Below, piece by piece: positions 8,058 to 33,448 of a stretch of 64,000 nt of DNA (position 1 is the first letter of the stretch; the number at the start of each line of letters is the position of its first letter). Origin of the DNA: Squalus acanthias (taxonomy: Eukaryota); contig CM059425.1 in the NCBI GenBank assembly GCA_030390025.1, positions 260,400,001-260,464,000 of the forward strand. The letters run 5' to 3'. A model generated the notes under the pieces. That model saw only the letters and a list, made by a program, of their open reading frames with translations. It was not told the origin of the DNA and made no database searches. The position numbers were made by a program, and so were the translations under genes.

Positions 8058-8233
8058 TTATGGCAGGAGATGAATTCCCATCACTCTCTCCTTGATCATT
8101 TGATGCTGTATTACGAGGGGCTCTCAAACACAGAAGTCTCTATTGGAATTTCAATTGAGCACTAAGAATGAGAAATGCCTTATCTTTTCTTTCAGAAGTT
8201 ACTTTACCTGATCCGCATCATCAGAAGCGGCAG
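8058..8233 (-). CDS. Copy A cytoplasmic exons: 26-nt exon 8233-8208 (AAASDDADQ) and putative last exon 8105-8058 (HQMIKERVMGIHLLP*)
   Basis: tattttcag acceptor and CAG|GTAAAG donor; taatacag acceptor; AATAAA on the minus strand at 7923-7928. The alternative is read-through to the stop at 8199. Confidence 0.55.
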
Positions 8234-11200
8234 CTGAAAATATTCCCCGTGTAACTATCTGTGAAGATGCCACAGTATTACCATGAAGTCCCACATCAGT
8301 AGAGCTTCCATTGTGAACCTTACCTCTCTTCAACTTCCAGATAGTAAACCCACTTAAAAGAAGGAAGATAATTAAAAAGGTGGTTCGAATGTAGAGGGTG
8401 ATGTTCAATTTGTCCTTGTCATCAGTGGGGAAGTGGATCTGACGGACGTCACTCCCGTGTTCATTTACAGCCACACAGCTGTAGTCCCCTCTCAGCGTTG
8501 GGTTAAGAATCTCTCCCACAGTTTGATGTTTGTCCGGCACTCGTGTGACTGTCGTGCTACTGCTGTCCACGGGCAGTGCGCTGTTTTCAGGGTCGATCCA
8601 TGTGATGTTTGCAGGTGGCTCCCCTTCAACCTTGCACACGATGGTGTCTCCAGTTATATTGTCGGTCACAACCGACAGCTCCAGGATGGTGGCTGGGGCT
8701 TGGGGAGGAAAGAGACAATGAGTTAACTCAATCTAATTAATCTTTATTAAACGGTCCGTGGTGACAACGTCCATTACGTGGCACTGAGAAACACGTGAGC
8801 ATGGAGAGGTGACACCCAACAGGAGATTGGATTGAAATATTCAGAGAGCAAGTGGACTGGCTCCTGATTGTAAAGGGACATGAGTTTGATGTTAACGGAG
8901 GAGGCGGATGGAATTAGCCTGAGTGAGTGGATCTGAACAACACAGCGGTCTGGAAATTGGGCTGCCTAAATGCCCTCCTAAACTGTTACAGGCGTCTCTC
9001 AGGTCTCAGCTCCTCACTGGGAGCGAATTTGCTCTTGTGTTTGTTCAACGTGATTTTATCACCTTCACCATATCATTGAGGTAGATGTTTCCTTACCGAC
9101 AACCTGTAGTCTCATCACATCCTGAGTCACGTTTTCCCCTTGTTCATTCTCGATGTGTACGTGACAGAAGTAGTCGCTGGTGTCGTTCAGCCCCAGGTCC
9201 CTCATCCTTATGGAGGCGTCTCCTTGGGTTGGGTTTCCGATCAGCTCATATCGATCTCCTTGATTTACACTAACTGTGTCAGTATAGTGAGAACCAGCGG
9301 CGAGGGAACGAGTGTGATTAAAAACAGTGGACTCTTGGCATGGATTCTCCTTCATCCAGAGGACAGTGATGGAGCTCGGATACCGGCCAGGGGGACTGAA
9401 GGTGCAGGGCAGTGTGGCAGAATCTCCCTTCATCCCAGTCACCGGCCGGTTATTGTTCTTATCAGCTGAGGTAGAGAAGGGTTTTAAAGAATGGACATTA
9501 TTCATTAGCACAGAGCATTAAACACAGTTTATACAACATATATGTCCCCTGTGCACTGTGAGGTTTGCTCTGACGACAGTGCAGGCAGACAACAGCACCT
9601 TACATTTAAACAGCGACTTTAACACAGTAAAACATTTCCTTCCTATTCACTCTCTCAAAACCCTTCATAATTTTGACAACCTCTACTAATTCTCCCCATA
9701 ACATTCTCTGCTCTGAGGAGAACAAGCTCAGTTTCTCCAGTCTCTCCACACAACAGAAGTGCCTCATCACTGGAACCATTCTAGTAAATCTCCTCTGCAC
9801 CCTCTCCAAGGCCTTGACATCGTTCCTAAAGAGTCCGGAATCGGACACAACACTCCAGCTAGGGCCCAACCTGTATTTTATAAAGGTTTAGCATAACTTC
9901 CTTGCTTTTGTACTCTTAACAGCTCTTCACAATCATCAACCTCACTCATTAATAATTCTCTTTATCCTACTCCAGTCCCACACCATTCTGATTGACTCTT
10001 AACTGCTCTCTGAAGTGGCTCAGTTGTATCAGCGCCTTCTCAGGGCAACGAGGGAAGGGCAATAAATGTCGGCCTTGGCAGCAACGTCCACATCACCAGA
10101 ACGAGTAAAACAAATACACACGGTTGTGATTGGATTATTTTACAGCACAACCTTATTTCTAGTTTGAATTATTCCTTACTTCTTATCTCGAGAACTCCAT
10201 GCTCGAGGCTAAATTTTCCTTTCTTTTCGTCCTTGAAATCCACATGACAAATGTACGTCTTCTTTGTGTCCGCTTTCTTCAGCTGTTTGATGATGATAGA
10301 AGCGTCGTTCTCCCTCGGGTTTCCCATCACTTGGTAGCGCTTGTCTACATTCAGGTGGATCTGATTCTTAAACCCATTGCTCTGTGAGTTTAGCGATGGA
10401 TAATTTGTGTAACTAAACACCAGTTTTGTCTTAGTTCTGTTCCAGGTGACGGTGATGTTGCCTTTATATCCAGGGTAAGGGTGAGTGAACTTGCAGAACA
10501 GAACAGTAGGCTTCCCTTCCCTAGCCGTCACCCTATCTGGGGTCTCCATGCTCCAGTTATTCTCACTGTGACCTGTGAGGACACACAGATGTCATGTTAA
10601 CACTTGACTGAGCCCAACAGTCAGACACTCCATGGGGGAACCACGACACACCCTGTACTGTCTGACATTCTAATGTCTATCTGAAACTGTGCTGAATTAT
10701 GGCCAGTTGTGTGCTGTGTGTCCACACTCAATAGGAAGTGGGTTGGAGTGCCTCCAGCCCACTGCACAGAGACTAAAGAAATAGAACCGGAGAGGCCTGC
10801 AGCACCGGAGGTCGTTCCACACCCCCTGTCTAAGCCTGCTCTTTCCTGGAGCCATCTTATCCCATCAGAGTATTCTGCCTTTAATACAAAAGAAAAGAAA
10901 GACTTGCATTTATATAGCATCTTTCACGACCTCAGCCTGTCCCAAAGCTCTTTACAACCAATGAGGGGTCTGGACAGAGTAGACAGAGAGACACTGTTCC
11001 AGTTGGCGGAAGGGTCGAGAACCAGAGGACACAGATTTAAGGTGATTGGCAAAAGAACCAAAGGCGACGAAAGAAAAAACTATTTTACGCAGCGAGCGGT
11101 TAAGATGGGGAATGCACTGCCTGAAAGGGTGGTGGAGGCAGACTCAATCACATCTTTCAAAAGGGAGTTGGATAAGTATCTGAAGGAAAACATTTTGCAG

Positions 11201-11619
11201 GTCTACGGGGAAAGGGCGGGGGAGTGGGACTCGATCAGAGCCAGCATGGGCTCGACGGGCCGAAAGGCCTTCTTCCGTGCTGTAACCATTCTATGATTCG
11301 ATGATTCTCTGATTCTATGTATTTATTGAAGTGGAGTCACTGTTGTAATATAGGAAACACGACAGCCAATTTGTGCACAGCAAGCTCCCACAAACAGCAA
11401 TGAAATAAATGGCCATGTCACCAGTTTTAGGTGTTGGTTGAGGGATAAATATCGTGCCTGTGCCGACTCTTTGAAATACCTCTCTAATTATTTCCACTCC
11501 CTTGCTCTTTCCCCATAGCCCAGAAGAAAGAAAGAAAATGGGTTCCTGCCTCCTCTTGGTGAATACATACGTTCTGCCGAGATGGCCAGGGCGAGTGCAC
11601 AAAACAAAATGCACAGCAT
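8058..11619 (-). CDS. Siglec-15-like V-V-C2 type I membrane receptor, copy A (6 coding exons, about 419 aa, apparently intact)
   Basis: GT-AG exons 11619-11571, 10572-10180, 9465-9097, 8698-8324, 8233-8208 and 8105-8058 join in frame (1260 nt; phases 1,1,1,1,0). V1 WSMETPDRV..VLFCKFTHP..GNPRENDAS..YICHVDF..HGVLEI and C2 APATILELSV..CKVEGEPPANITW resemble Siglec-15 as I recall it (WSMQVP..LPCTFTHP..GNPRRNDLS..YFCRVEF..HGVRL; APRIVNISV..CTAEGEPPPALAW). The last exon is the least certain. Confidence 0.85.
8324..8698 (-). CDS. Copy A C2-type Ig domain plus transmembrane exon (TM LYIRTTFLIIFLLLSGFTIW)
   Basis: Pyrimidine-tract acceptor, 375 nt, CKVEGEPPANITW..GDYSCVAVNEHGS, hydrophobic segment followed by KLKR, G|GTAAGG donor; ORF 8199..8669. 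Confidence 0.9.
9097..9465 (-). CDS. Copy A V-set Ig domain 2 exon
   Basis: ccttctctacctcag acceptor, 369 nt, GDSATLPCTF..W..GDASIRM..DTSDYFC, G|GTAAGG donor; ORF 9065..9511. Confidence 0.92.
9640..9920 (-). mobile_element. CR1 ORF2 3' fragment in the V1-V2 intron (paralogous copy at about 30695-30975)
   Basis: ALERVQRRFTRM..RLEKL..FSSEQR. Confidence 0.8.
10180..10572 (-). CDS. Copy A V-set Ig domain 1 exon
   Basis: ctcacag acceptor, 393 nt, B-strand Cys, C-strand Trp, YxC motif, GTAAGG donor; ORF 10169..10549. Confidence 0.92.
10960..11320 (+). mobile_element. CR1 3' fragment in intron 1
   Basis: MRGLDRVDRE..SRTRGHRFK; attctatg tail. Confidence 0.8.
11571..11619 (-). CDS. Copy A signal-peptide exon MLCILFCALALAISAE
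   Basis: ATG at 11619, hydrophobic 16-mer, phase-1 donor C|GTATGT that fits the phase-1 V1 acceptor; conserved in copy B. Confidence 0.85.
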
Positions 11620-11700
11620 TCTCTTCACTCCTTCAGTGCCCAGATCTCTCTGACGGCCGACCACCGACTGTGGAACTGCGACGGTTCCTCGCTATTTCTT

Positions 11701-11782
11701 GTTACTTCCTTCTTGAATCTGGGATTGCCAAAGAAAATAAAAATACTTGTGATATTTACCAGCCAGCTTCAGATGAGGAAGT
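11701..11782. promoter_or_regulatory. ETS/PU.1-type motifs upstream of the copy A leader
   Basis: GAGGAAGT at 11775-11782 (+) and GAAGGAAGTAAC at 11701-11712 (-); both retained in copy B (33603-33610 and about 33530-33541). Motif match only. Confidence 0.35.
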
Positions 11783-12645
11783 CTCTTTTGCTCCCTCCCC
11801 AGTCAGCTCAATGTCTGCACAGTGCCCCCATGTCTGGGAGCAACTGGCCTGCGCAGAAGCCTTGAAGTCAGACATAAGTTCTTCAGCACCTGCCACACCA
11901 CCCCCTGTAGACGTCTGCAACTTGAAACAACTATGGAAGGCACCAAACACTTGTAGAATTGCAGCGACAGTCAGAAGGAATCATCCAGCCACTGACCTGA
12001 AGGTAGTTGATGATCCTTTGAATCGTGCTGGTGGGGGGTCCTTCCTGCTGCTTAAAGCGCGTTCAGCTGTGCGCGCTTAATAGAGGGCGTTGGCTCGAGG
12101 GTGGAGCTTCAGAACGGCAGCGCTGACATCAGTATGGTCTGTCTGCTCTGCATACTTCCGGCGGACCTTAGCTGCGCACGGGCTGACGCCTTCACCAAGT
12201 TGGCCTCCGGCGTCATTCATGGCAGAAGTGTGCGCGTCTGCAGCAGACGCCATTTTGGTCCCCGAACTGCCCTCATAGCGCCCAAACCACGGGAGCTACT
12301 GAGCCCAATTTCCTGCCCCATGTCTTTACATTTAGTGTTGCAACTGGGCTAAATAGAAGGAAGGAGTTAATTATTTCTTGGAAAGCCCTTGGGTAAAAAA
12401 ACAGAAGTGGGTGGAGTCAGTCACCACATCACCAGTTTCAGACTTGCTGCACGCAAATAGATAAAAAAACAATCATTTGAAAATGTTCAAATTGATTTAA
12501 AACTAGACATCATCCTGGAACTGAACCATGTGATTCTCCAAAGCCCACATTTAAACCTTCATTTAACAGTGGTACAGTGTATTCTGTGGAGTTACAAATC
12601 TTACAATCAATTTAACTTCAAATAAAACTTGCTCCATGATCATCA

Positions 12646-13984
12646 GTCAATGATTCAATTTAATCCAGCACATCCAGGCTGAATTCATTGTTTTCAGTTA
12701 CTTAACAATACAACAAACCGATTGAGACAAAGCAGGACTTCCTTAAATTGGTGTATGGGAGGGGTGCAGCGACACAGAGTACAGGGGGAGGGTGCGCTGG
12801 GGAACCAGGCGAGAGTCACAGTCCCATTCTTGGTTCCTGAACCATTACAACCACCTCTCTCTCTGCTGATTCCAACCCTGCAACCCCCATTCCACATTCC
12901 TTCCCACCATCTTTCCACCACTCACATTTCTGCTTCTCACTGAGCAGCTCATCCTCAGTTTTGAGACGGTCTCTTTCTGCAAACTTTAACAGCTTCTGAG
13001 CAAGTTTCTGCTGCTGCTTGTTGCTCAACAATCTTATCTTTAAGTTCCTGGATTTCACTCTCCATTGCTTGCACCTCTAACTGTTTCTGTATCAGCTTCT
13101 CGTTCTTTGCACTTTCCTTTTAGTTCTTTCAGAGTCTTCTCGTCCTGTTTGTTTAATTTCTTTTACACTCCTTTCTGAGACCCCCAAACAGCCTGGGTTA
13201 CAACCTTAGCCCCTGCGAGCAATCCTTGTACCGTAACCTCGGTCCTGGCCTCTGTCGGGGTGTGTGGAAAGTCAGCTTTCGGCATCTGGGCTCATTGACT
13301 CAAAGGATCTGCCTCTCCCAGCAGGACACTAACCTTTAAAGATGTCCCGCCATGTCTCTCCGATTATGCATCGATATATTTTCCTGTGAGATTACTGTCC
13401 TCTCTTCAGAATACAAAAGATGTCAAGCGAGACGCTGTAGTTGTTATCTAACTTTAAAGAATTTAATTTGACCCACAGTTTGTACCAGAAAGAAAGCAAT
13501 AACTTTTCATACAACCTTTTCCTTTTCTAGCGAGTGCAACTCAGGACAAAGAATTGATCGGATTCCTTGTCTCGGGCAGAAAACAAATCTTCCTTTCCTT
13601 TGGCGTCTTGTTCCAATGTCTTACGTGGTTCTCTTGAAAAACCCCGTGTAGAATGAACTGTTTTATGTGGTTTCCTCTCCAAAATCTGCTGCTTAATTAT
13701 CAAAGGATCTCTTAACAGTTTGCAGACCTTGCTTCCTTATCTCTGCAACCGTCCGCATTGTTTCTTCCCGTCAGTTACCTCAGGTATAATCTTACCAAGG
13801 CTCCGTTTCATCCTGGCTAACACAGACGTATCTCTCACTCAGCATCCTGGACAATATGCATCCTGACTTCAGTCAATGTGACAGCGGAGTTCTTGACCAA
13901 GAAAGCAAAGGCTTCACCACAAGTCCATTATTTTAGTCTTCCTTAAAACATGTATCAAAAGTCCTCCACACCAGATCCTCCACA
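12646..13984 (-). mobile_element. Probable LTR-retroelement remnant (LTR about 13385-13984 plus leader/gag-like fragment); partial copies at 5224-6160 and 40420-41025
   Basis: TG start on the minus strand at 13984, ATTAAA, CA end, then a degenerate Lys/Gln-rich ORF; family not identified. Confidence 0.35.
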
Positions 13985-14242
13985 TTTCAACAAAACCAAC
14001 AACTTGTTTTCACACAGCACCTTTAATTTCCCACATTACAACAGTGACTCCGCTTTAAAAGTACTTCATTGGCTGTAAAGCACTTTGAAACGTCCGGTGG
14101 TCGTGAAAGGTGCTATATAAACACAAGTCTTTCTTTCTTTCTTAATGTAGTAAAATGTCCCAAGGTGCTTCACAGGAGTATTAAAAGAGAAAACTTTGAC
14201 ACCGAGCCACATAAGGAGATATTAGGGCAGGTGACCAGATGA

Positions 14243-15085
14243 CGGAGTGCAGATCGGAACAGAGTGTTAAGCTGCGAGTTTGGTTTGGGCAGGGCTAAGC
14301 AAGCTCTGTGCTGGAGAGCAGGTGAGAGTAATTAATTAATTAAGTGGTCTAATCTGGTTCTGTAACTGCCAGAGAGCTCACTTATTTAAATCTCAGCAGT
14401 ATAAATAAGGGAGGCTAGAGTGCAGTTTGTCACGGAGTGCAGATCGGAACAGAGTGTTAAGCTGCGAGTTTGGTGAGTGAGGGAGTAAATCTGAAAGGTT
14501 AATCTTTTATTTTTAGAAATTCTAGTCTTGTGTGCTTACAATTAGCATTTAAATTTACTGTTTCAAGTTTTAAGTTTCTTCCAGGCTTGCGCAGGGCTAA
14601 GCAAGCTCTGTGCTGGAGAGCAGGTGAGAGTAATTAATTAATTAAGTGGTCTAATCTGGTTCTGTAATTGCCAGAGAGCTCACTTATTTAAATCTCAGTA
14701 GTATAAGTAAGGGAGTCTAGACTGCAGTTTGTCATGGAGTGCAGATCGGAACAGAGTGTTAAGCTGCGAGTTTGGTGAGTGAGGGAGTAAATCTTAAAGG
14801 TTAATCTCTTATTTTTAGAAATTCTAGTCTTGTGTGCTTACAATTAGCATTTAAATTTACTGTTTCAAGTTTTAAGTTTCTTCCAGGCTTGCGCAGGGCG
14901 AAGCAAGCTCTGTGCTGGAGAGCAGGTGAGAGTAATTAATTAATTAAGTGGTCTAATCTGGTTCTGTAATTGCCAGAGAGCTCACTTATTTAAATCTCAG
15001 TAGTATAAGTAAGGGAGTCTAGACTGCAGTTTGTCATGGAGTGCAGATCGGAACAGAGTGTTAAGCTGCGAGTTTGGTGAGTGAG
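14243..15085 (+). repeat. About 302-bp tandem repeats in a CR1 5' UTR
   Basis: ggagtgcagatcggaacagagtgttaagctgcgagtttggt at about 14244, 14434, 14736 and 15038. Confidence 0.9.
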
Positions 15086-16658
15086 GGAGTTCGGTGAGGG
15101 AGGTGTTCCTTTCTTTTTCCATCTTTGTCAGCTTCCAGGAGAGCAGGAGCTAAAAAGCTGCACAAGAGGGGACAGAGAACCAGCGGTGAGTATTTCTACA
15201 GTATTTCTACATTCCAGTCATTAAAGTAAAAGTAAGGTCTCTAGTTTAGAGTAAGTAGTGTTTAAAGGGAAGTAAGATCCCAAGATATTTAATATTGTTT
15301 AATTTAAAGGGAGCAAATTAAGGATAGGACATGGCAGGGCAGCTCGGCAGCGTGGAGTGCTCCTCCTGTGCTATGTTGGAAGTCAGGGACACTATAGGTG
15401 TCCAAGGTGAACACATGTGCAGGAAGTGTCTCCAGCTGCAGCTACTCGAAATCCGCATTTCGGAGCTGGAGCTGCGACTGGAGTCACTGTGCAGCATCCG
15501 CGAAGCTGAGATCTTCATGGATAGCATGTTTAACAAGGTGGTCACACCGCAAGTAAAGAGTGCACAGGCAGACAGGGAATGGGTGACCACCAGACAGAGT
15601 AAAAGAACTAGGAACTAGGAACTAGGAAGCCCCCTGGGTCAATCTCCCTCTCCGACAGATTTTCCGTTTTGGATACTGATGGGGGAGATGGTTTCTCAGG
15701 GGAATGCAGCAAGAGCCAAGTCCATGGCACTACGAGTGGCTCAGCTGCACAGGACGGGAGGAAAAAGAGTGGGAGAGCAATAGTGATAGGGGATTCTATC
15801 ATAAGGGGAACAGATAGACGTTTCTGTGGCCGCAGACGTGACTCCAGGATAGTATGTTGCCTCCCTGGTGCCAGGGTCAAGGATGTCACTGAACGGCTGC
15901 AGGGCATTCTGAAGGGGGTGGGCGAACAGTCAGAGGTCGTGGTTCACATTGGCACCAACGACATGGGTAGAAAGAGGGATGAGGTCATGCAACAAGAATT
16001 TAGGGAGCTAGGTAGCAGATTAAAAAGCAGGACCTCAAAGGTTGTAATCTCTGGATTATTCCCGGTGCCACGTGCTAGTGAGTATAGGAATAAAAGGATA
16101 GAGCAGATGAATGCGTGGCTAAAGAGTTGGTGCAGGAGGGAGGGCTTTAGTTTCCTGGATCACTGGGTCGGCTTCTGGGGAAGGTGGGACCTGTACAAGT
16201 CGGACGGGTTGCACCTGAACCGAAACGGGACCAACATCCTTGCGGGGAGGTTTGCTAGTACTGTTGGGAGGGGGGGTTAAACTAACTTGGCAGGGGGATG
16301 GGATACGGAGTGGAGCTATAGTAGGGGGTGATGCACAGCCAAATACAGAGGAAAAAACAAGTCAGCCTGGAAGGCAGAGCAAATATGTAACAGCACAAAG
16401 GAGTATGGCAAGGCTGGATGGCATTTATTTTAATGCAAGGAGTCTTGCGAGTAAGGCAGATGAATTGAAGGTGTTGATGAACACATGGGAGTATGATATT
16501 GTTGCTATCACAGAGACATGATTGAGGGAGGGGCAGGACTGGCAGCTCAATATTCCGGGGTATAGAATCTTCAGGCGAGACAGAAGTGGGTGTAAAAGAG
16601 GAGGGGGTGTTGCAATATTAATCAAGGAGTCAATTACTGCTGTAAGGAGGGATAATAT

Positions 16659-21368: not shown

Positions 21369-22094
21369 TATCTTAGCAGGTTCCTCTAATGAGGCCATAT
21401 GGGGAGAACTTAAAAACAAAAAGGGGGCAAGTACTTTGCTGGGAGTGTACTATAGGCCCCAAACAGTCAGCGGGAGATAGAGGAACAGATATGTAGGCAA
21501 ATTTCAGAGAAGTGTAGAAATAATAGGGTAATAATAGTAGGGGATTTCAACTTCCCCAATATTAACTGGGATAGTCAGAGTGTGAAAGGCTTAGAGGGTG
21601 CGCAATTCTTAAAGTGCATCCAGGAGAGCTTTTTGAGCCAGCATGTAGAAAGTCCATCAAGAGAGGGGGCGGTACTGGACCTAATTCTAGGGAATGTAGC
21701 CGGGCAAGTGGTAGAAGTGTTAGTAGGAGAGCATTTTGGTGACAGTGACCATAATTCGGTGAGATTTAAGGTAGTCATGGAAAAGGACAAAGATGGACCG
21801 GAAATAAAGGTTCTAAATTGGGGGAAGGCCGATTTTAATATGATAAGGCAGGATCTGGCCAAAGTGGACTGGGATCAGCTTTTTGTAGGAAAATCCACAT
21901 CAGAGCAGTGGGAGTCTTTCAGAAAGGAAATAGAGAGAGTACAACGGCAGCATGTTCCCGTAAAGGTCAAGGGTGGGACCAACAAGTCCAGGGAACCCTG
22001 GGTGTCAAGGGATATACGAGAATGGATTAGGAAAAAAAGGAAGGCTTTTGGCAGATACAAAGGACTAAAAACAGTGGAAGCCCTAGAGGAGTAT

Positions 22095-23970: not shown

Positions 23971-26900
23971 GTATAGAAAGTGCAGGGGGGTACTTAAAAA
24001 AGAAATTAGGAGAGCGAAGAGGGGGAATGAAATAACACTGGCGGGCAAAATAAAGGAAAATCCCAAGGTGTTTTATAAGTATATTAAGGGCAAGAGGATA
24101 ACCAGGGCAAGAGTAGGGCCCATTAGGGACCAAAGTGGCAATCTGTGTGTAGAGCCAGAAGATGTAGGTGGGGTTTTAAATGAATATTTTACATCTGTGT
24201 TCACTATGGAGAAGGACGATGTAGGCATAGAAATCAGGCAGGGGGACTGTGATATACTTGAACAAATTAGTATTGAGAGGGAGGAGGTACTAGCGGTTTT
24301 AGTGGGCTTAAAAGTGGATAAATCCCCAGGACCAGACAAGATGTATCCCAGGCTGCTGTGTGAGGCAAGGGAAGAGATTGCAGGGGCTCTGACACAAATT
24401 TTCAGAACCTCCCTGGCCACAGGGGAGGTGCCAGAGGACTGGAGGACAACTAACGTAGTACCATTATTCAAGAAGGGTAGTAGGGATAAACCAGGGGATT
24501 ACAGGCCATTGAGCCTAACATCAGTGGTAGGGAAATTATTGGAAAAAATTCTGAGGGACAGAATTAGTCTCCACTTGGAGAGGCAAGGATTAATCAAGGA
24601 TAGTCAGCATTGCTTTGTCAGGGGGAGATCATGTCTGACCAAATTGATTGCATTTTTCGAGGGGGTGACTAGGTGTGTGGATGAGGGTAGTGCAGTTGAT
24701 GTGGTCTACATGGACTTCAGTAAGGCTTTTGACAAAGTCCCGCATGGGAGACTGGTCAAGAAGGTAAGAGCCCATGGGATCCAGGGCAACTTGGCACATT
24801 GGATCCAAAATTGGCTTAGTGGCAGGAGGCAGAGGGTGATGGTCGAAGGTTGTTTTTGTGACTGGAAGCCTGTGTCCAGTGGTGTACCGCAGGGATCGGT
24901 GCTGGGTCCTTTGCTGTTTGTAGTGTACATTAATGATTTAGATATGAATGTAGGAGGTATGATCAGTAAGTTTGCAAATGACACGAAAATTGATGGGGTG
25001 GTAAATAGCGAGGAGGGAAGCCTCAGGCTACAGGACGATATAGACGGGTTGGTCAGATGGGCAGAACAGTGGCAAATGGAATTTAAACCTGAAAAGTGTG
25101 AGGTGATGCATTTTGGGAGGACTAACAAGGCAAGGGAATACACAATGAATGGTAGGACCCTAGGAAGGACAGAGGAATAGAGGGACCTTGGTGTGCATGT
25201 ACATAGATCCCTGAAGGCAGCAGGATAGGTAGATAAGGTGCTTAAAAAGGCATATGGGATGCTTGCCTTCATTTGCCGAGGCATAGAATATAAGAGCAGA
25301 GAGGTTATGACGGAGCTGTACAAAACAATAGTTAGGCCACAGCTGGAATACTGTGTGCAGTTCTGGTCGCCACACTATAGGAAGGATGTGATTGCATTGG
25401 AGAGGGTGCAGAGGAGATTCACCAGGATGTTACCTGGGCTGCAGCGCTTCAGCTATGAAGAGAGACTGGACCGGCTGGGGTTGTTTTCCTTAGAGCAGAG
25501 AAGGCTGAGATGGGACCTGATTGAAGTGTACAAAATTATGAGGGGCATAGATAGGGTAGATAGAAAGGAACTTTTCCCCTTAGTAGAGGGGTCAATAACC
25601 AGGGAGCACAGTTTCAAGGTAAGGGGCAGGAGGTTTAGAGGGGATTTGAGGAAAACTTTTTCACCCAGAGGGTGGTTGGAATCTGGAACTCACTGCCTGA
25701 AAGGGTGGTAGAGGCAGGAACCCTCACAATATTCAAGAAACATTTAGATGAGCACTTGAAACGCCATAGCATACAAGGCTACGGACCAAGTGCTGGAAAA
25801 TGGGATTAGAATAGACAGGGCTTGATGGCCGGCGCGGACACGATGGGCCGAAGGGCCTCTTTCTGTGCTGTATAACTCTATGACTCTATGATTCTGTGAC
25901 CAAACGCTTGGTCAAAGAGGTAGGTTTTAAGGAGCGTCTTATTGGAGGATTGAGTGGCAGAAAGACAGAAAGGTTTAGGGAGGGAATTCCAAAGCTTAAG
26001 GCCTTGGCAGCTGAAGGCACGACTACCAATGGTTGAGCGATTATAATCAGGAATGTTCAAGAGGCCAGAATTAGAAGAGTGCATATTACAGAGCTAGAGA
26101 AGGGCGAGGCCATTGAGGGATTTAAAACAAGGATGAGAATTTTAAAATCGAGGCATTGCTTAACCGGGAGCCAATGTAGGTCAGCGAGCACAGGGGTGAT
26201 TGGTGAAGGCTACTTGGCTTCGGTCTTCCCAATATTTAGTTGGTGGAAATTTCTACTCATACTGTACTGGATGTCGGACAAACAGTCTGACAATTTAGAG
26301 ACAGTGGAGGGGTTGAGAGATGGTGGTGAGGCAGAGCTGTATGCCCGTCAGCGTACGTGAGTAATCTAACGCTGTGATTATGGACGATGTCGCCGAGGAG
26401 CAGCATGTAGATGAGAAATAGGAGGGGTCAAGGATAGATCCTTGGGGGATACCAGAGGTTTCCTGAATCTGCTGTGCAGTGAGTTTATCTACCTTACAGA
26501 TGGCCAGTCCCCAACTAGATGCTCAACTTAAAAACACTCAAACTGTTGTTTTGAACAATCTTCTGTTGTTCACTTGAGTAGTAATGAATTCAGTGTTCGG
26601 GTTATAATCTCTTTATTTTTTTCTACTTCAACATAAAAATCTATCTATAATTTCTGCAGAGTATAAAACAATTTACAAGCGGAGTTTTGTCAGCAGATTT
26701 GAACGTAGGCATGCGCTCATCCTTCTACACTTCTTCCTTCTCAAACATTAACAGAAAAACTTCTTTTTTTATACACTGTTTCTTCCTTATCAAACTGGAA
26801 ATGGCATTGCCTTTTATGGTAGTCTCCGGTCAATGCACCGTCTTTCAGCCGATTCTTACGCACACAAGTTTATATTTCTCTACAACATACGTACATCAAC

Positions 26901-27782
26901 ACCCTTTCGTGTAGGTTGCAGTAATATGTAGTGGAATGTTTATAGTAAGGCACTACTATAAACATCCCAAGGCTTTACTTCAATCTTGAACATTGGCTAT
27001 TGCTGGGGTGATCTGTAATTCTTTCTCTCTCTCTTTCTCTTTCCAATGATGTCAATCACGTTTTTTGCTCTCCATTGTAAGCTTTTTATTTCGACTGGCA
27101 TTAAATTGACAGCAAGACCAAATCTTTTGAAACAATTTTGAATAAGCTTATTAAACACTCACACTCATGCACATCAAAACACTAGCCTACTGATATCCTA
27201 TGGACTCTGCTCGATGACAACAGGTAAGGTAATGGGTTAGATTTAAACAGACTAGTACTTCCCTGAGCCAAGCAATGCACGCGGCATTTTTCCTTGGTGA
27301 GTTTCGATGGTGAGTTTCGATGGGTTTTCGATGCTGTCTCTGTGGGGGTTATCCTGTTATGCAGGTTTCCTTTGTTAAGTTTCGCGCCGTTGCCTTAAGC
27401 TCCGCTCCCAGGGAGATCAATACCCATCAAATTCATCTTTATTACATTCATCTTATATTAATAGTCTCGAGTCCATCACACATAGAAAACATAGATTTTT
27501 ATTCTTACACCATTGAATGAGCAAAACACAAACACTTTTCAGAAGCTGAATTTGCCGAGTTCCCTGTACCAACAAAACCCTCCATTGTCTCAATCGTCAA
27601 TGATGAAACTTTCCACCGATCCTCCGCCAATGTTATGGCAGGAGATGAATTCCCATCACTCTCTCCTTGATCATTTGATGCTGTATTACGAGGGGCTCTC
27701 AAACACAGAAGTCTCGATTGGAATTTCAATTGAGCACTAAGAATGAGAAATGCCTTATCTTTTCTTTCAGCAGTTACTTTAC

Positions 27783-28264
27783 CTGTTCCGCATCATCAGA
27801 ACCAGCAGCTGAAAACATTACCGGTGTAACTATCTGTGAAGATGCCACAGTATTACCATGATGTCCCACACCAGGAGAGCTTCTATTGTGAATCTTCAAC
27901 CTCCAGATAGTCAAAGCAATTGAAAGAAAGAAGATAATTGAAATGGAGGTTCGAATGTAGAGGTCGATGTTCAACTTGTCCTTGTCATCAGCGGGGAAGT
28001 GGATCTGACGGACGTCACTCCCGTGTTCATTTACAGCCACACAGCTGTAGTTTCCTCTCAGCGTTGGGTTAAGAATCTCTCCCACAGTTTGATGTTTGTC
28101 CGGCACTCGTGTGACTGTCGTGCTACTGCTGTCCACGGGCAGTGCGCTCTTTTCAGGGTCGATCCATGTGATGTTTGCGGGTGGCTCCCCTTCAACCTTG
28201 CACACGATGGTGTCTCCAGTTATATTGTCGGTCACAACCGACAGCTCCAGGATGGTGGCTGGGG
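27783..28264 (-). CDS. Copy B C2-TM-cytoplasmic exon (former short intron read through in frame)
   Basis: ORF 27774..28235; TM LYIRTSISIIFFLSIALTIW; next donor CAG|GTAAAG at 27782. Confidence 0.8.
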
Positions 28265-28637
28265 CTTGGGGAGGAAAGAGACAATGAGTTAACTCAATCT
28301 AATTAATCTTTATTAAACGGTCCGTGGTGACAACGGCCATTACGTGGCACTGAGAAACACGTGAGCATGGAGAGGTGACACCCAACAGGAGATTGGATTG
28401 AAATATTCAGAGAGCAAGTGGACTGGCTCCTGATTGTAAAGGGAAATGAGTTTGATGTTAACGGAGGAGGCGGATGGAATTAGCCTGAGTGAGTGGATCT
28501 GAACAACACAGCGGCCTGGAAATTGGGCTGCCTAAATGCCCTCCTAAACTGTTACAGGCGTCTCTCAGGTCTCAGCTCCTCACTGGGAGCGAATTTGCTC
28601 TTGTGTTTGTTCAACGTGATTTTATCACCTTCACCAT

Positions 28638-30123
28638 TGTAGGGGGTGATGGTTTGTGTCAGCTTCACCTCTGACTTCTGAGCGGTTTGAATTGCTCCCA
28701 CTCCCTTGTTTCTAGACCTTGGACTTATTTGGGGGTTGTGATAAAAAGTGCAGCAGACAACTGAGTTTGATGCAAGAACTTTGATCTTTATTTAAGAAAG
28801 TAATACACAACACAAACACTCTTAACACTCTAAAAGTGGGGAACACTTCGGTACAAGCGATGGAAATAACATAAGGAGAATACTTCACCCCTCCCAATCC
28901 CACTTCACTGGCTAGGTTGGACTCCAGAGGACCAGGGATAATACTCACCAGAATCAATGACAGTTGGGTTAGTTGGCGGTTTTGGGGTTCACTCTATATG
29001 TCGGTTGGTGTCTGCTGTACCCCGTACGCGGTAGAGGACTTCAACTGTGTATCTGGTCAGTCTTCGTGAGTCCGCTGATGCGGTAGGGTACGTATTGGAT
29101 CTATCAGGTGAGTACCCACTTTTCTTTGGTTTAGAAGTAGGGTTTAGAGGTTTTTAAGGGAAAATCTTACCCAGGGGAAATCAGGAGTAGATTGTAGAGT
29201 GGAAACTTTGCGGATCTTCGGGTTTTCTTCGAGTTGGTTTTCTTTGGTCGCGGTGGCCCAAATATTGGTACTTGGTGTTCGGTTGGTTGTTTCGTGAGGG
29301 CCTTGTTGCCGCGAGGTGTCTGATGGTCGCTGAGGCGGTCGTTCTGGTTTCTTCACGTGTCGGCCTACTTTGTTGGATGGTCTGGCCTTCGAGCTGTCGA
29401 CCTCCTGGTTGGACACGGAACGCTGAACGGTGGTGTTGTAGAACTGTGTTGCGGAGAATGCCTCCGTGGATGTCTTCTTGTTCTTCCTTCCTCTTCTTCT
29501 TTTTCAGGTTGAGAACGGGCCTTCAATTATACCCATTGAAGCTCCCTTATCTGCGCGCCAAATCAGATCCCGGTCTTTGTTAGATTTTGGCGGGCTCGTT
29601 AACGGTAACTTGTTTGTTAAGGTGTGAAGTGGTTCCGGGATGGCCCCATCCTGTCGATTTGCCACTTAATCGGAGTTGATTGTCCTCATTTTTTGGGTTT
29701 CTTGACTGGGCCTAGGATTTCTATAGAGTAAGCCGAAGTAATCTGTTTTATGCATGTTTTAATGGGCTCTGTAACTTGGGGTGGAGACTGTTTTTCCTTG
29801 GGTTTCTTGTAAGGATGTTAATGTCTGACAGGGGCCGATTTACACTCCCAGCGAGGTCATGCGGTTCCCCAGACAGTTCCCATTAGCTCCAATACCCAAA
29901 CTGTTTTTACAGAGGTTGATCCACCTCCCTTTACAGCCTTTTCTCCCTTACAAGTCCAGACATGTCTTTTAAAATACGAAATCTTGGTTTTTACACTAAA
30001 ACGTCCTTCGGTTAAGCCCAATGCATTTCACTACCCTGTAATAGTTAGAAAAGAGTCCAAAGTCTTTTTCCTTAGGGTTTGTCTTCGAGTTTTGGGGGAT
30101 CTGTGAATTTTGAGAATCTTACA
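28638..30123 (-). mobile_element. Solo LTR (family 1) in the V2-C2 intron of copy B
   Basis: TG...CA ends; imperfect 4-bp TSD ccat/tcat; absent from copy A; reverse complement of 34216-35825. Confidence 0.85.
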
Positions 30124-30152
30124 TCATATCATTGACATAGATGTTTCCTTAC

Positions 30153-30521
30153 CGACAAGCTGTAGTCTCATCACATCCTGAATCACGTTTTCCCCTTGTT
30201 CATTCTCGATGTGTACGTGACAGAAGTAGTCGCTGGTGTCGTTCAGCCCCAGGTCCCTCATCCTTATGGAGGCGTCTCCTTGGGTTGGGTTTCCGGTCAG
30301 CTCATATCGATCTCCTTGATTTACAGTAACTGAGTCAGTATAGTGAGAACCAGCGGCGACGGAACGAGTGTGATTAAAAACAGTGGACTCTTGGCATGGA
30401 TTCTCCTTCATCCAGAGGACAGTGATGTTGTTCGGATACCGGCCAGGGGGACTGAAGGTGCAGGGCAGTGTGGCAGAATCTCCCTTCATCCCAGTCACTG
30501 GCCGGGTATTGTTCTCATCAG
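30153..30521 (-). CDS. Copy B V-set domain 2 exon (open)
   Basis: ORF 30124..30567; splice sites intact; about 10 aa differences from copy A. Confidence 0.88.
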
Positions 30522-31237
30522 CTGAGGTAGAGAAGAGTTTTAAAGAATGGACATTATTCATTAGCACAGAGCATTAAACACAGTTTATACAACAAATATG
30601 TCCCCTGTGCACTGTGAGGTTTGCTCTGACGGCAGTGCAGGCAGACAACAGCAGCTTCCATTTAAACAGCGACTTTAACACAGTAAAACATTTCCTTCCT
30701 ATTCACTCTCTCAAAACCCTTCATAATTTTGACAACCTCTACTAATTCTCCCCATAGCCTTCTCTGCTCTGAGGAGAACAATCTCAGTTTCTCCAGTTTC
30801 TCCACACAACAGAAGTGCCTCATCACTGGAACCATTCTAGTAAATCTCCTCTGCACCCTCTCCAAGGCCTTGACATCCTTCCGAAAGGGTCCAGAATCGG
30901 ACACAACACTCCAGCTAGGGCCTAACCTGTATTTTATAAAGGTTTAGCATAACTTCCTTGCTTTTGTACTCTAAACAGCTCTTCACAATCATCAACCTCA
31001 CTCATTAATAATTCTCTTTATCCTACTCCAGTCCCACACCATCCTGATTGACTCTTAACTGCTCTCTGAAGTGGCTCAGTTGTATCAGCGCCTTCTCAGG
31101 GCAACGAGGGAAGGGCAATAAATGTCGGCCTTGGCAGCAACGCCCACATCACCAGAACGAGTAAAACAAATACACACCTGGTTGTGATTGGAATATTTTA
31201 CAGCACAACCTTATTTCTAGTTTGAATTATTCCTTAC

Positions 31238-31631
31238 CTGTTATCTCGAGAACTCCATGCTCGAGTTCAAATATTCCTCCCTTTACGTCCTTGAAATCCA
31301 CACGACAAAATGTACGTTTTCTTTGTTTCCTCTTCCCTCAGCTGTTTGATGATGATGGATGCGTCGTTCTCCCTCGGGTTTCCCAACACTCGGTAGCGCT
31401 CGTTTATATTCTGGTCGATCTGATTCTTAAACCCATTGCTCTGCGAGTTTAGCGACTGATAATTTGTGTAATTAAACACCAGTTCTGTCTGAGTTCTGTT
31501 CCAGGTGACGGTGATGTTGCCTTCATATCCAGGGTAAGGGTGAGTGAACTTGCAGAACAGAACAGTAGGCTTCCCTTCCCTAGCCGTCACCCTATCTGGG
31601 GTCTCCATGCTCCAGTTATTCTCACTGTGAC
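31238..31631 (-). pseudogene. Copy B V1 exon with +1 frameshift; the corrected frame reads YICRVDFKDVKGGIFELEHGVLEIT
   Basis: Aligns with 10180-10572; 394 vs 393 nt; ORF 31267..31608 runs out of frame after TYI. Confidence 0.85.
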
Positions 31632-32230
31632 CTGTGAGGACACACAGATGTCATGTTAACACTTGACTGAGCCCAACAGTCAGACACTCCATGGGGGAAC
31701 CACGACACACCCTGTACTTTCTGACATTCTAATGTCTATCTGAAACTGTGCTGAATTATGGCCAGTTGTGTGCTGTGTGTCCACACTCAATAGGAAGTGG
31801 GTTGGAGTGCCTCCAGCCCACTGCACAGAGACTAAAGAAATAGAACCGGAGAGGCCTGCAGCACCGGAGGTCGTTCCACACCCCCTGTCTAAGCCTGCTC
31901 TTTCCTGGAGCCATCTTATCCCATCAGAGTATTCTGCCTTTAATACCAGATAACAGGAACTTGCATTTCTACAGCGTCTTTCACAGCCTCAGGATGTTCC
32001 AAAAACTATTTTACGCAGCGAGCGGTTAAGATGGGGAATGCACTGCCTGAAAGGATGGTGGAGGCAGACTCAATCACATCTTTCAAAAGGGAGTTGGATC
32101 AGTATTTGAAGGAAAAAAAATTTGCAGGTCTACGGGGAAAGGGCGGGGGAGTGGGACTGGATCAGAGCCAGCACGGGCTCGACGGGCCGAAAGGCCTTCT
32201 TCCGTGCTGTAACCATTCTATGACTCTATG

Positions 32231-33121
32231 GGGGAAAAATTCAGTATCGCCCCGTTTGCGGCGTAATTATCGGCTGGGCGCAAAGATTAGCGCCTGGCAC
32301 TAATTATCACCTCCGACTGAAAACTTGATTTTTATCGCTCCTGGAGGTGATTGGAGCGCTAAATCAGGCGCTTCACACCTGTCTTAAGGCACAAAGGCCG
32401 AGGAGCGAGGCGCTACCTCAGAGCGCTGGCGAAGCTCATGTGATGTCAGTCAGCAATGGAACACAGACACACTGGCGCCAGCCAGTTCTTAAAGGGAAGG
32501 GTCGATCTTGCTCTCCATCCACACCCTGCTCATTGCAGCCTTGAATCTCAGCCTGGAGAGACCTGTACATCAAATCTGCTGGAAAGAACAATGGAGAGGA
32601 CCAGGGAAAGAGCTCAGAGTGAAGCCCCCACAGTCTCTTCTAAATCGATACAAGGAATGGCAAATAAAAATGAACCTGCAAAGTGCTGCTCAGTACCCAA
32701 AACTCCTTCACACAGCATTGAATCTCTCCAGAAGTCTCTGTCTCTCTCTCTCAGAATGCGTGGTTCAAAAATGTCACCAACAAAGAAAAGCAGGAAGTGG
32801 TTGCCTTTAAATAGCGCTCCCCCAGTCCCTGCCTGACTGCAAAACGCTCCCCTCAACCTGTCGTTACTAGTGGCAGGCGGTAAGGCAGGGGGCGCTACTC
32901 AATATCTGCTCCGGGGTGCTACCGGGGCGTTACGCACTCGACTGACGTCACGATCTGCCGGTGCAGGAGATCGTGGCGGCAGTGTTTAGCGCTGCCGCAA
33001 AATGTCTAGTTAATTTCGCAAGCGGTGCAAACATCGCCGCGCCCGGGCACTAGTTGCTTTGCGCCTCATTAGCGCCCTCTTAAGGCGCTAACTGGAGGCG
33101 CAACCAACTGAATTTTTCCCC
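32231..33121. mobile_element. MITE / non-autonomous DNA transposon (possibly PIF/Harbinger) in copy B intron 1
   Basis: TIRs ggggaaaaattcagt / actgaatttttcccc; tat(g) duplication; absent from copy A. Confidence 0.8.
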
Positions 33122-33399
33122 TATGATTCTATGATTCTCTGATTCTAAGTATTTTTGAAGTGGAGTCCCTGTTGTAATGTAGGAAACGCGGCAGCCAATT
33201 TACGCACAGCAAGGTCCCACAAACAGCAATGAAATAAATGGCCATGTCACCAGTTTTAGGTGTTGGTTGAGGGATAAATATCATGCCTGTGCCAACTCTT
33301 TGAAATACCTCTCTAATTATTTCCACTCCCCTGCTCTTTCCCCATAGCCCAGAAGAAACAAAGAAAATGGGTTCCTGCCTCCTCTTGGGGAATACGTAC

Positions 33400-33448
33400 G
33401 TTCTGCCGAGATGGCCAGGGCGAGTGCACAAAACAAAATGCACAGCAT
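33400..33448 (-). CDS. Copy B signal-peptide exon
   Basis: Same peptide as copy A; donor C|GTACGT. Confidence 0.8.

What the first reader, a model, noticed from the sequence alone, without database searches (positions are those of the whole stretch)
8058..33448. Tandem family of Siglec-15-like receptors with a doubled V domain (L-V-V-C2-TM), a TM arginine and no tyrosine motif
Seen: two paralogous genes whose exons splice to leader + V + V + C2/TM + short tail; both TMs start LYIRT; no Tyr in either predicted tail. Known: mammalian Siglec-15 is single-copy with one V and one C2 and pairs with DAP12 through a TM Lys; Siglecs normally have a single V-set domain; an Arg near the outer end of the TM marks FcR-gamma-coupled activating receptors (OSCAR, GPVI, LILRA, NKp46). 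Inference: a lineage-specific expanded family of activating Siglec-15-derived immune receptors in a cartilaginous fish. I know of no description of it, but cannot check.
Basis: partly seen in the sequence, partly recalled or inferred. Interest (0 to 1): 0.85.

Follow-up and report, generated by a model that had tools for sequence, protein, structure and literature searches.

The report
Shark Siglec-15-like receptor pair, arginine type
Two neighbouring shark genes encode immune receptors related to Siglec-15 that carry two outer domains, a charged arginine in the membrane span and no tyrosine signalling tail, so they look like activating partners of inhibitory sister genes, a family that genome annotation already lists in many sharks and rays but that I found described in no paper.

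Summary
Two minus-strand paralogues lie in a tandem duplication about 96% identical. Each has a leader, V1, V2 and one exon for C2, TM and tail. Both TMs begin LYIRT and neither tail holds a Tyr.

- Gene B's V1 carries one extra T just before the F-strand Cys codon, so its frame is broken.
- The tail is a 38-41 aa run-on of the C2/TM exon, not a separate short exon.

Both V exons match human Siglec-15 (7ZOZ) best. The sialic-acid Arg is His in V1 and V2 of gene A. Gene B keeps the Arg codon only behind its frameshift.

The doubled V is not special to this family or lineage:
- V1-V2-C2 models exist in RefSeq for sharks, rays, skates and chimaera.
- V1 is sister to bony-vertebrate Siglec-15 V. 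V2 is a separate, older clade.

The window genes are not the Lys-TM Siglec-15 orthologue. Their V1 and TM group with the ITIM-bearing long-tail branch, with Gly replaced by Arg. A skate model has Arg at the aligned TM position.

RNA contigs show V1-V2-C2 splicing in a close paralogue, and low-level gene-A-like transcripts.

The most likely reading is an adaptor-coupled activating counterpart of inhibitory paralogues; function is inferred. The same scan noted related loci elsewhere in this genome. I rate it a new variant of a known kind, of moderate interest.

The parts
11571..11619 (-). Gene A leader exon (16 codons + 1 base, donor GAAC|GTATGT)
   Evidence: tblastn of Heptranchias P0003 residues 1-18; splice context; sequence
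10180..10572 (-). Gene A V1 exon (V-set; F-strand C-H-V, His codon 10244-10246 where Siglec-15 has the essential Arg)
   Evidence: Pfam V-set 1.9e-10; 7zoz_A 8.3e-16 with Arg aligned to His; phase 1-1 splice sites
9097..9465 (-). Gene A V2 exon (V-set; F-strand C-H-V-H, His codon 9161-9163)
   Evidence: Pfam V-set 7.7e-17; 7zoz_A 1.1e-12; V2 clade
8199..8698 (-). Gene A terminal coding exon: C2 domain, stalk, TM (8337-8396, Arg codon 8385-8387), 41-aa Tyr-less tail, stop at 8199-8201
   Evidence: Pfam Ig_3/I-set; hydropathy and tail count; alignment with gene B; sequence
7905..8198 (-). Gene A 3' untranslated part with AATAAA at 7923-7928 (the end is inferred from gene B's contig ends)
33400..33448 (-). 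Gene B leader exon, identical in protein to gene A's
31238..31631 (-). Gene B V1 exon, 394 nt. The extra T lies in the run 31307-31310 and breaks the frame before the F-strand Cys. The piece behind it reads C-R-V-D-F (Arg codon 31302-31304).
   Evidence: alignment; tblastn in two frames; translation of the downstream piece; DNA run X5
30153..30521 (-). Gene B V2 exon
   Evidence: Pfam V-set 4.1e-16; RNA joints at 30155 and 30525
27774..28264 (-). Gene B terminal coding exon: C2, TM (27903-27962, Arg codon 27951-27953), 38-aa Tyr-less tail. It lacks 9 nt that in gene A hold a GTAAGG.
27480..27773 (-). Gene B 3' untranslated part. AATAAA lies at 27498-27503. RNA contigs end at about 27480 and 27487.
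6159..12643 (.). Duplication unit holding gene A
   Evidence: self-blastn; divergence by block, 3.0-7.0%
26191..36086 (.). Duplication unit holding gene B, with extra repeat insertions at about 28640-30118 and 32230-33121
   Evidence: very high repeat depth in those bins

Best explanation
Genes A and B are tandem paralogues of a cartilaginous-fish receptor family related to Siglec-15. Its ancestral ectodomain is V1-V2-C2.

Within that family they do not belong to the Lys-TM branch, which is the counterpart of mammalian Siglec-15. They belong to the branch whose other members have an uncharged TM and long tails with ITIM-like tyrosines. Compared with that branch they show three changes:
- Arg replaces Gly at the fourth residue of the TM.
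- The tail ends at the old splice donor, so it has 38-41 residues and no Tyr.
- In gene A, His replaces the sialic-acid-binding Arg of V1.

Shown:
- the gene anatomy, the family relations and the substitutions;
- splicing of V1-V2-C2 in a close paralogue;
- low-level transcripts that look like gene A.

Inferred:
- The Arg recruits an acidic ITAM adaptor dimer of the FcR-gamma/zeta type, as the Arg near the top of the CD89 TM does. The genes would then act as activating counterparts of inhibitory sister genes (paired receptors).
- Ligand binding of gene A is not canonical Arg-dependent sialic acid binding.
- Gene B is either a decaying copy or uses V2 only.
For: Anatomy and splice sites.

Siglec-15 likeness.

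V tree of 72 rows:
- The chondrichthyan V1 clade (99/97*) is sister (93/83) to bony-vertebrate Siglec-15 V.
- winA_V1 pairs with the Heptranchias long-tail V1 (96/95*), outside the Lys-TM clade (98/94*).

TM:
- Local alignment scores (gene A/gene B) are 96/82 against P0003 and 74/69 against P0133.
- Against the 12 Lys-TM proteins the scores are 19-35.
- The most hydrophobic 19-aa window includes the Arg.

Skate parallel: MAFFT puts the window Arg in one column with the Arg of Rhinoraja P0148 and P0149 and the Gly of P0003 and P0133. P0148 also has a 31-aa tail without Tyr.

Tail exons: none with tyrosine motifs found in the window; best tblastn E-value 0.048, inside a LINE ORF.

RNA contigs of 3 runs:
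- They join V1, V2 and C2 within 2-4 nt of the predicted borders.
- They have zero depth in the two repeat-free intron bins.
- X17 record 14 shows 14 differences from gene B where gene A has 12. It has the A state at 27875, the only site in its range that one search lists. It runs unspliced across the old donor into the 3' end.

Excess divergence: the V1 3' half (25 of 200, P 9e-8) and TM plus tail (22 of 191, P 2e-6) exceed the 3.6% background.

Literature, read as passages:
- CD89 binds FcR-gamma through an Arg near the N-terminal end of its TM; NKp30 and NKp46 are similar (PMC13107469).
- Siglec-15 uses a TM Lys for DAP10/12 and R143 for sialic acid (PMC7226832).
Against: - An Arg four residues into the TM could simply sit at the interface.
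- dN/dS between A and B is about 1 or higher (V1 1.24, V2 3.29, TM plus tail 2.11), but none differs significantly from neutrality. Relaxed constraint is therefore not excluded.
- Gene B's V1 is frame-broken.
- Transcripts that look like A or B are at depth 3-6, against about 47 for the paralogue. They come from contigs, not reads, and the runs are only guessed to be RNA.
- The dominant spliced contig is neither A nor B. It has 33 differences and 3 gaps in V1 where A has 16, plus a 3-nt insertion.
- The inhibitory partner in this genome was not seen by me. I know of it only from unchecked scan notes.
- The donor CAG|GTAAAG is kept in both genes just before the stop, so a spliced longer tail is not fully excluded.
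Confidence: 0.55

Rival explanations
1. Both copies are decaying or non-signalling duplicates (pseudogenes or decoys). The TM Arg and the loss of Tyr would then be neutral changes in genes released from constraint.
For: - Gene B's V1 is frameshifted.
- dN/dS is about 1 or higher and not different from neutrality.
- A/B-like RNA depth is low.
- The essential Arg is lost in gene A.
- The locus is full of LINE insertions.
Against: - All four exons and all splice sites of gene A are intact.
- The 9-nt loss in gene B keeps the frame, and both tails stay open to the same stop.
- LYIRT is kept in both genes, although the TM is the most diverged patch.
- The same Arg position with a Tyr-less tail recurs in a skate.
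- The diverged patches exceed the neutral background three-fold, which drift alone does not give.
Confidence: 0.25
2. They are inhibitory receptors like their closest relatives. The tail continues from the kept donor CAG|GTAAAG into tyrosine-bearing exons that I did not recognise or that lie outside the window.
For: - The donor is conserved in both genes, at the place where the tail alignment with P0003 ends.
- The tails of relatives are low in complexity and hard to find by tblastn.
Against: - No tail exon was found downstream of either gene.
- An A-like RNA contig is contiguous across the donor. Two contigs end 11-18 nt past an AATAAA.
- An uncharged-to-Arg change in the TM is not expected in an inhibitory receptor.
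Confidence: 0.08
3. They are an expansion of the true Siglec-15 orthologue, with Arg simply replacing the TM Lys.
For: Siglec-15 is the best solved-structure match. Many relatives are named Siglec-15 by RefSeq.
Against: - The Lys-TM genes form their own V1 clade (98/94*) that excludes winA_V1.
- The A/B TM aligns with the uncharged-TM class, not the Lys class.
- The Arg aligns with a Gly, not with the Lys.
Confidence: 0.05
4. The two copies are an assembly artefact: two haplotypes placed in tandem.
For: They are only 3-4% diverged. In DNA run X5, single contigs at single-copy depth were seen at several places.
Against: - There are no N runs in the window.
- The copies are 20 kb apart, with different LINE content between and inside them.
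- Only about 55% of run X5 was read, so missing contigs prove nothing. At the T run, X5 shows both an A-like contig (35.1 of depth 49.1) and other depth without the deletion.
Confidence: 0.05

Closest known systems
Siglec-15 of bony vertebrates (human structure 7ZOZ; TM Lys with DAP12/DAP10)
   Same: - V1 and V2 both match its V domain best.
- The V1 clade is its sister.
- It also has a C2 domain, one TM with a basic residue and no ITIM.
   Different: - The window genes have two V domains instead of one.
- The Arg that aligns with the Arg of the structure's Y-F-C-R-V-E-F stretch is His in both V domains of gene A.
- There is no mid-TM Lys. An Arg sits near the outer end, on a TM homologous to that of ITIM-bearing paralogues.
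Chondrichthyan Lys-TM 'sialic acid-binding Ig-like lectin 15' RefSeq models (for example Cetorhinus P0130, Heterodontus P0131, Callorhinchus P0007)
   Same: Same L-V1-V2-C2-TM plan. V2 is 68-77% identical and V1 63-68% identical. The V2 F-strand His is shared.
   Different: - Their TM has a central Lys and a 4-9 aa tail in elasmobranchs (20 aa in Callorhinchus P0007), and is very conserved.
- Their V1 forms a separate clade.
- Their V1 F strand mostly has Leu.
Long-tail ITIM-bearing paralogues (Heptranchias perlo XP_067838218.1 = P0003 'siglec 12 isoform X3'; Rhinoraja P0137; Leucoraja P0129)
   Same: They are the nearest relatives: about 70-73% identical in V1, V2 and C2/TM. V1 is sister at 96/95*. 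The TM is colinear.
   Different: They have Gly where A and B have Arg. They keep Arg in the V1 F strand. Their tails hold 3-7 Tyr with ITIM-like motifs.
Rhinoraja longicauda P0148 and P0149 (RefSeq 'sialic acid-binding Ig-like lectin 15')
   Same: Arg at the aligned TM position. P0148 has a 31-aa tail without Tyr.
   Different: Their C2 groups with the skate's own long-tail gene (98/94*). The Arg form therefore arose separately, or the ectodomains were homogenised. P0148 as modelled starts with two V2-type domains.
Paired Siglecs of primates (Siglec-5/14, Siglec-11/16)
   Same: Activating members resemble inhibitory neighbours in the ectodomain, carry a basic TM residue and lack ITIMs. Patchy similarity suggests gene conversion (abstracts of PMC4042635 and PMC5701461 seen in the listing).
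   Different: They belong to another Siglec branch (CD33-related), with a single V domain. The adaptor details for those Siglecs are my recollection, not checked here.
CD89 (Fc-alpha-RI), NKp46, NKp30
   Same: Arg in the top part of the TM, used to assemble with FcR-gamma or zeta dimers (PMC13107469 passages).
   Different: The ectodomains are unrelated. This is a resemblance in TM logic only.

Membership tests
Siglec-15 (orthologue group) | V-set domain of Siglec-15 type | tested here: met
   7zoz_A is the top hit for V1 (8.3e-16; next is CD33 at 9e-5) and for V2 (1.1e-12). The V1 clade is sister to bony-vertebrate Siglec-15 V at 93/83.
Siglec-15 (orthologue group) | Essential F-strand Arg (R143 in human) for sialic acid binding | tested here: not met
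   It aligns to His in A-V1, A-V2 and B-V2. B-V1 has the Arg codon only behind a frameshift. The role of R143 is taken from PMC7226832 passages.
Siglec-15 (orthologue group) | One V and one C2 domain | tested here: not met
   Two V-set exons per gene. The same holds in all chondrichthyan relatives examined.
Siglec-15 (orthologue group) | Mid-TM Lys that pairs with DAP12/DAP10 | tested here: not met
   No Lys in the TM, and Arg at TM residue 4. TM alignment scores are 19-35 against the Lys class and 69-96 against P0003 and P0133 of the uncharged class.
Siglec-15 (orthologue group) | Orthologous position in the genome | not testable with these tools
   The window holds only these two genes and retroelements. 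No annotated shark genome is on hand.
Chondrichthyan V1-V2-C2 Siglec-15-like family | V1-type followed by V2-type domain, then C2 and TM | tested here: met
   phmmer domain scores separate the V1 and V2 types in every family member listed. winA_V1 lies in the V1 clade (99/97*). winA_V2 and winB_V2 lie in the V2 clade (94/97).
Paired receptor, activating member | Basic residue inside the TM | tested here: met
   The Arg lies inside the most hydrophobic 19-aa window in both genes.
Paired receptor, activating member | No ITIM/ITSM tyrosine in the tail | tested here: met
   0 Tyr in the 41- and 38-aa tails. No further tail exon was found. An A-like RNA contig is unspliced there.
Paired receptor, activating member | Inhibitory partner with a near-identical ectodomain in the same genome | tested here: inconclusive
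   RNA contigs show a paralogue 88% (V1), 95-96% (V2) and 97% (C2) like gene B that departs just after C2. Its tail was not seen. Neighbouring loci are known only from unchecked scan notes.
Paired receptor, activating member | Association with an ITAM adaptor through the TM charge | not testable with these tools
   Needs co-expression and co-precipitation.
Siglec (functional lectin) | Binds sialylated glycans | not testable with these tools
   Only the missing Arg speaks, and it speaks against canonical binding.

The most novel reading that the evidence does not exclude
Cartilaginous fishes hold an old Siglec-15-related receptor system that no paper I found describes.
- Its ectodomain was V1-V2-C2 from before the split of chimaeras and elasmobranchs.
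- It has three signalling classes: mid-TM Lys; uncharged TM with ITIM tails; and outer-TM Arg without Tyr.
- The Arg class has been born repeatedly from inhibitory genes, here in a shark and separately in a skate.

Paired inhibitory/activating Siglec logic would then have arisen independently of the mammalian CD33-related pairs. The activating copies would have dropped the canonical sialic-acid Arg, which would fit escape from pathogen mimicry.
Probability: 0.35. Interest if true: 0.65.

Novelty: new variant of a known kind. Interest (0 to 1): 0.45.

Why it matters
Siglec-15 is usually presented as a conserved receptor from fish to mammals, with a conserved TM Lys and a conserved binding Arg (PMC7226832 passages).

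The shark, ray and chimaera models show something different:
- In cartilaginous fishes the relatives form a multigene family with a second V domain.
- The family has both inhibitory and putatively activating members.
- The canonical Arg is often missing, even in the Lys-TM orthologues.

If the Arg-TM genes signal through an ITAM adaptor, paired-receptor evolution in Siglec relatives would extend to the oldest jawed vertebrates. It would also offer a natural case of the same TM substitution arising twice.

As it stands, the genes in this window are two further members of a family that annotation pipelines already predict, and one of the two is damaged.

Tried and rejected
1. Leader. My first guess was an ATG ORF at about 11415. 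I rejected it when Heptranchias P0003 residues 1-18 aligned to 11619-11566 and 33448-33398. That site has a proper phase-1 donor.

2. Tail. I first modelled a donor AGAG|GTAAGG after the TM, joined to a 3-codon exon at 8161. I rejected this because gene B lacks those 9 nt yet keeps the frame, and because an A-like RNA contig is contiguous there.

3. ITIM exons. tblastn of five relatives' tails at E up to 20 gave nothing believable.

4. More copies. None were found in the window. The other large ORFs are reverse transcriptase, endonuclease, a GDSL-type ORF1 and a GIY-YIG ORF.

5. Positive selection. dN/dS above 1 is not significant on these few changes. The excess divergence with raised dS in V1 and in TM plus tail (0.068 and 0.065, against 0.012-0.031 in V2 and C2) fits patchy gene conversion at least as well as selection.

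6. The protein atlas gave only generic V-set neighbours for V2.

7. The C2 exon alone is a generic I-set/C2 domain. Its match to Siglec-15 has E-value 0.047 only.

8. Papers. Seven searches found no paper on shark or ray Siglec-15-like genes.
- PMC13738210 mentions 'shark' only inside the name Sharkey.
- PMC7226832 has 0 occurrences of shark, cartilaginous, Callorhinchus or lungfish.
- Subscription papers are not in the library. Supplements were not asked for.

9. Not done:
- No phylogeny against CD33-related Siglecs, NKp30, CD300 or NITR, because I held no sequences of those.
- No search or fold with joined exons.
- No structure prediction.

Full report
**What is there**

The window has no N runs. 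It holds a tandem duplication: 6159-12643 matches 26191-36086 in colinear blocks of 93-98% identity. The units are interrupted and separated by retroelement ORFs: RVT_1, Exo_endo_phos, a GDSL-type ORF1, and elsewhere a GIY-YIG ORF.

Each unit carries three Ig-type open frames on the minus strand. tblastn of gene A's three frames against the window finds exactly two copies of each and no third.

Pfam results:
- A-V1: V-set, 1.9e-10
- A-V2: V-set, 7.7e-17
- B-V2: V-set, 4.1e-16
- Both C2 parts: Ig_3/I-set, about 1e-6

**Gene models**

Homology with a Heptranchias perlo protein (P0003) places the leader at 11619-11571 in gene A and 33448-33400 in gene B. The two leaders are identical in protein.

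All internal junctions are phase 1 with AG acceptors and GTAAGG or GTATGT donors:
- Gene A: V1 10572-10180, V2 9465-9097, last exon from 8698.
- Gene B: V1 31631-31238, V2 30521-30153, last exon from 28264.

The last exon encodes the C2 domain, a stalk, the TM and the tail in one frame. I first took a GTAAGG after the TM of gene A for a donor. Gene B lacks exactly 9 nt that include it, and the frame is kept. Both frames run on to a stop at the same place, giving tails of 41 aa (A) and 38 aa (B) without any Tyr. AATAAA lies about 270 nt further on, at 7928 and 27503.

Both TMs start LYIRT. The most hydrophobic 19-residue window includes the Arg in both genes.

**The flaw in gene B**

Gene B's V1 has one extra T in a T run, directly before the codon of the F-strand Cys (column 451).
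- tblastn needs two frames to cover the exon.
- The upstream frame stops 14 codons later.
- The piece behind the run, read on its own, gives C-R-V-D-F....

In DNA run X5, from another sample than the best holders, an A-like contig lacks that base, as gene A does (depth 35.1 of 49.1). The remaining depth of 14 covers the place without the deletion. This is weak independent support that the extra T is real.

**Relation to Siglec-15**

Against all solved structures, human Siglec-15 (7zoz_A) is the best match of V1 (8.3e-16; next is CD33 at 9e-5) and of V2 (1.1e-12; next is CD276 at 1.8e-9). In both alignments the Arg of the structure's Y-F-C-R-V-E-F stretch lies opposite His.

That Arg (R143) is needed for sialic acid binding, and a TM Lys binds DAP10/12. 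Both statements come from passages of PMC7226832 that cite Angata and colleagues.

The C2 part is generic; its match to Siglec-15 has E-value 0.047.

**The family elsewhere**

phmmer of A-V1 against 1.84 billion representatives gave 117 proteins at E up to 0.001. Each of the nine best hits has two or more V stretches. By the sources' own names they come from:
- Heptranchias, Mobula, Amblyraja, Narcine and Callorhinchus;
- the lungfish Protopterus. Salamanders follow lower in the list.

A word search with P0003 added models from Cetorhinus, Heterodontus, Mustelus, Pristis, Chiloscyllium, Rhincodon, Leucoraja, Hypanus, Rhinoraja and others. Many are named 'sialic acid-binding Ig-like lectin 15' (39 proteins at E up to 1e-20).

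Domain scores show that every chondrichthyan member listed has a V1-type domain followed by one or more V2-type domains.

**Tree of V domains**

I chose 32 proteins and split them into V domains, giving 72 rows with the window's three intact V exons. Only 3 of the 7 domains of P0001 were kept, and domains under 90 aa were dropped. The tree is rooted on a hagfish CD276-like protein; it did not include other Siglecs.

- The chondrichthyan V1 clade (19 rows, 99/97*) is sister (93/83, not starred) to the bony-vertebrate Siglec-15 V clade (97/85*).
- The V2 clade (23 rows, 94/97) joins the second domain of another chondrichthyan V-V family (98/87*).
- The doubled V domains of lungfish, salamanders and gar lie inside the Siglec-15 V clade, so they are separate events.

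The second V domain is therefore old and general in cartilaginous fishes, not a feature of the window's genes.

**Where A and B belong**

The relatives fall into classes:
- **Lys class.** Proteins of about 400 aa with a very conserved TM holding a central Lys, and a 4-9 aa tail in elasmobranchs (20 aa in Callorhinchus P0007).
- **Long-tail class.** An uncharged TM and tails with 3-7 Tyr, with ITIM-like motifs in six of the seven by my pattern.

Three results place A and B with the long-tail class:
- winA_V1 pairs with the Heptranchias long-tail V1 (96/95*), outside the Lys-class V1 clade (98/94*).
- The stalk and TM of A/B score 96/82 against P0003 and 74/69 against Pristis P0133, but 19-35 against all 12 Lys-class proteins.
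- In a MAFFT alignment the Arg of A and B stands over the Gly of P0003 and P0133.

The same column holds Arg in two Rhinoraja longicauda models (P0148, P0149). P0148 also has a 31-aa Tyr-less tail.

In a tree of the C2 parts of 23 of 24 chosen relatives plus A and B (P0142 was dropped by my pattern), domains group by taxon. The Rhinoraja Arg forms sit with that skate's long-tail gene (98/94*). The Arg form therefore arose more than once, or the ectodomains are homogenised within genomes.

**The binding Arg across the family**
- V2 has His in 20 of the 23 V2-clade rows. The exceptions are Arg in Rhincodon, Tyr in Hypanus and Cys in Mobula hypostoma, and two of the 20 were read by eye because my pattern missed them.
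- Lys-class V1 has Leu in 9 of 10 rows.
- Long-tail V1 mostly keeps Arg.
- Gene A's V1 has His.

**A against B**

Non-coding flanks differ by 3.6% (88 of 2,425). Two patches differ far more:
- the 3' half of V1: 25 of 200, P 9e-8;
- TM plus tail: 22 of 191, P 2e-6.

| Part | dN/dS |
|---|---|
| V1 | 1.24 |
| V2 | 3.29 |
| C2 | 0.47 |
| TM plus tail | 2.11 |

None differs significantly from neutrality. dS is also raised in the two patches. I read this as patchy gene conversion from other paralogues, possibly together with selection. It is not simple decay, which would not exceed the background.

**Expression**

No listed run is on record as RNA. Three runs of the same organism are guessed to be RNA.

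Laid on 27600-33500 at 92% likeness, the three runs behave like RNA:
- They have zero depth in the two repeat-free intron bins (28388-28584 and 31737-31933), where DNA run X5 has 55-61.
- Their contigs of 1,131, 603 and 2,302 nt join 28265 to 30155.
- They join 30525 to 31345 with 102 unaligned letters between, about the length of the diverged end of V1.

These joints are within 2-4 nt of the predicted borders. They fit exact use of the borders if the source differs from gene B at a base or two next to each joint.

These contigs are not A or B. Over 31345-31625 they show 33 differences and 3 gaps where A has 16, they carry a 3-nt insertion, and they leave gene B's sequence just after C2. So a spliced V1-V2-C2 message is shown for a close paralogue, most likely a long-tail gene.

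Contigs that look like A or B exist at depth 3-6:
- X17 record 14 (27600-27883) has 14 differences where A has 12. It has the A state at 27875, the only site in its range that one search lists, and it is unspliced across the old donor.
- X17 record 19 covers the V1 start with 2 differences and stops at the exon border.
- Two contigs end at about 27480 and 27487, just past the AATAAA.

Contigs cannot give levels or exact ends, so this is supportive only.

**How it most likely works**

In the alignment with P0003 the A/B tail stops at the kept donor, where P0003's tail runs on into its tyrosine-bearing part. No such exons follow in the window.

A long-tail gene that gains a TM Arg, ends its tail there and carries no Tyr is the usual way an activating partner arises from an inhibitory receptor. 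An Arg near the top of the TM is how CD89 binds the FcR-gamma dimer, and NKp30 and NKp46 are thought to do likewise with zeta/gamma (PMC13107469 passages).

I therefore favour an adaptor-coupled activating receptor. In gene A it would have a ligand site that no longer uses the canonical Arg. The adaptor, the ligand and the cell type are all inferred.

**Novelty**

Seven full-text searches found no description of these genes in cartilaginous fishes. The library lacks most subscription journals.

The sequences themselves are in RefSeq for many species. Earlier notes of this scan flag related loci next to this window and on other pieces of the same genome. I could not check those.

Noticed in passing
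window 12700-26100, 829-4178, 36174-37670, 42042-43361, 56906-58315: LINE-type retroelement ORFs (reverse transcriptase, AP-type endonuclease, a GDSL-like ORF1) fill the space between and around the two genes, in both orientations.
   Followed up: partly
window 62360-63265 (-): An ORF with a weak GIY-YIG match (1.2e-4, just above the Pfam cut-off). It is possibly the endonuclease part of a Penelope-like element.
   Followed up: no
window 14282-15090: Self-blastn shows copies offset by 302 nt and 604 nt at 96-98% identity, that is a tandem repeat with a unit of about 302 nt.
   Followed up: no
window 5221-6161, 12642-13579, 40418-41025: A further repeated segment of about 0.6-0.9 kb, 97-98% identical, sits at three places. 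Two of them flank gene A's duplication unit.
   Followed up: no
proteins P0130-P0141 (other species): The Lys-TM Siglec-15 orthologues of sharks and rays mostly have Leu, not Arg, at the sialic-acid-binding position of V1 (9 of 10 rows). Their V2 has His in 7 of 10 rows. The canonical Arg thus seems to be missing from the orthologue itself in most elasmobranchs examined.
   Followed up: partly
proteins P0013, P0015, P0019, P0021, P0036, P0157 (other species): A second chondrichthyan V-V family whose second domain is sister to V2. Its members carry either a TM Lys or an ITIM-like V-T-Y-A-A-V motif.
   Followed up: partly
protein P0001 (Protopterus annectens): A lungfish model with seven tandem Siglec-15-type V domains, all keeping the Arg, before one C2 and a TM.
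   Followed up: no
window 46132-47074, both strands: Several overlapping ORFs of 175-302 aa on both strands lie in the most GC-rich part of the window (GC 0.55). Only a chance-level Pfam hit was found.
   Followed up: no
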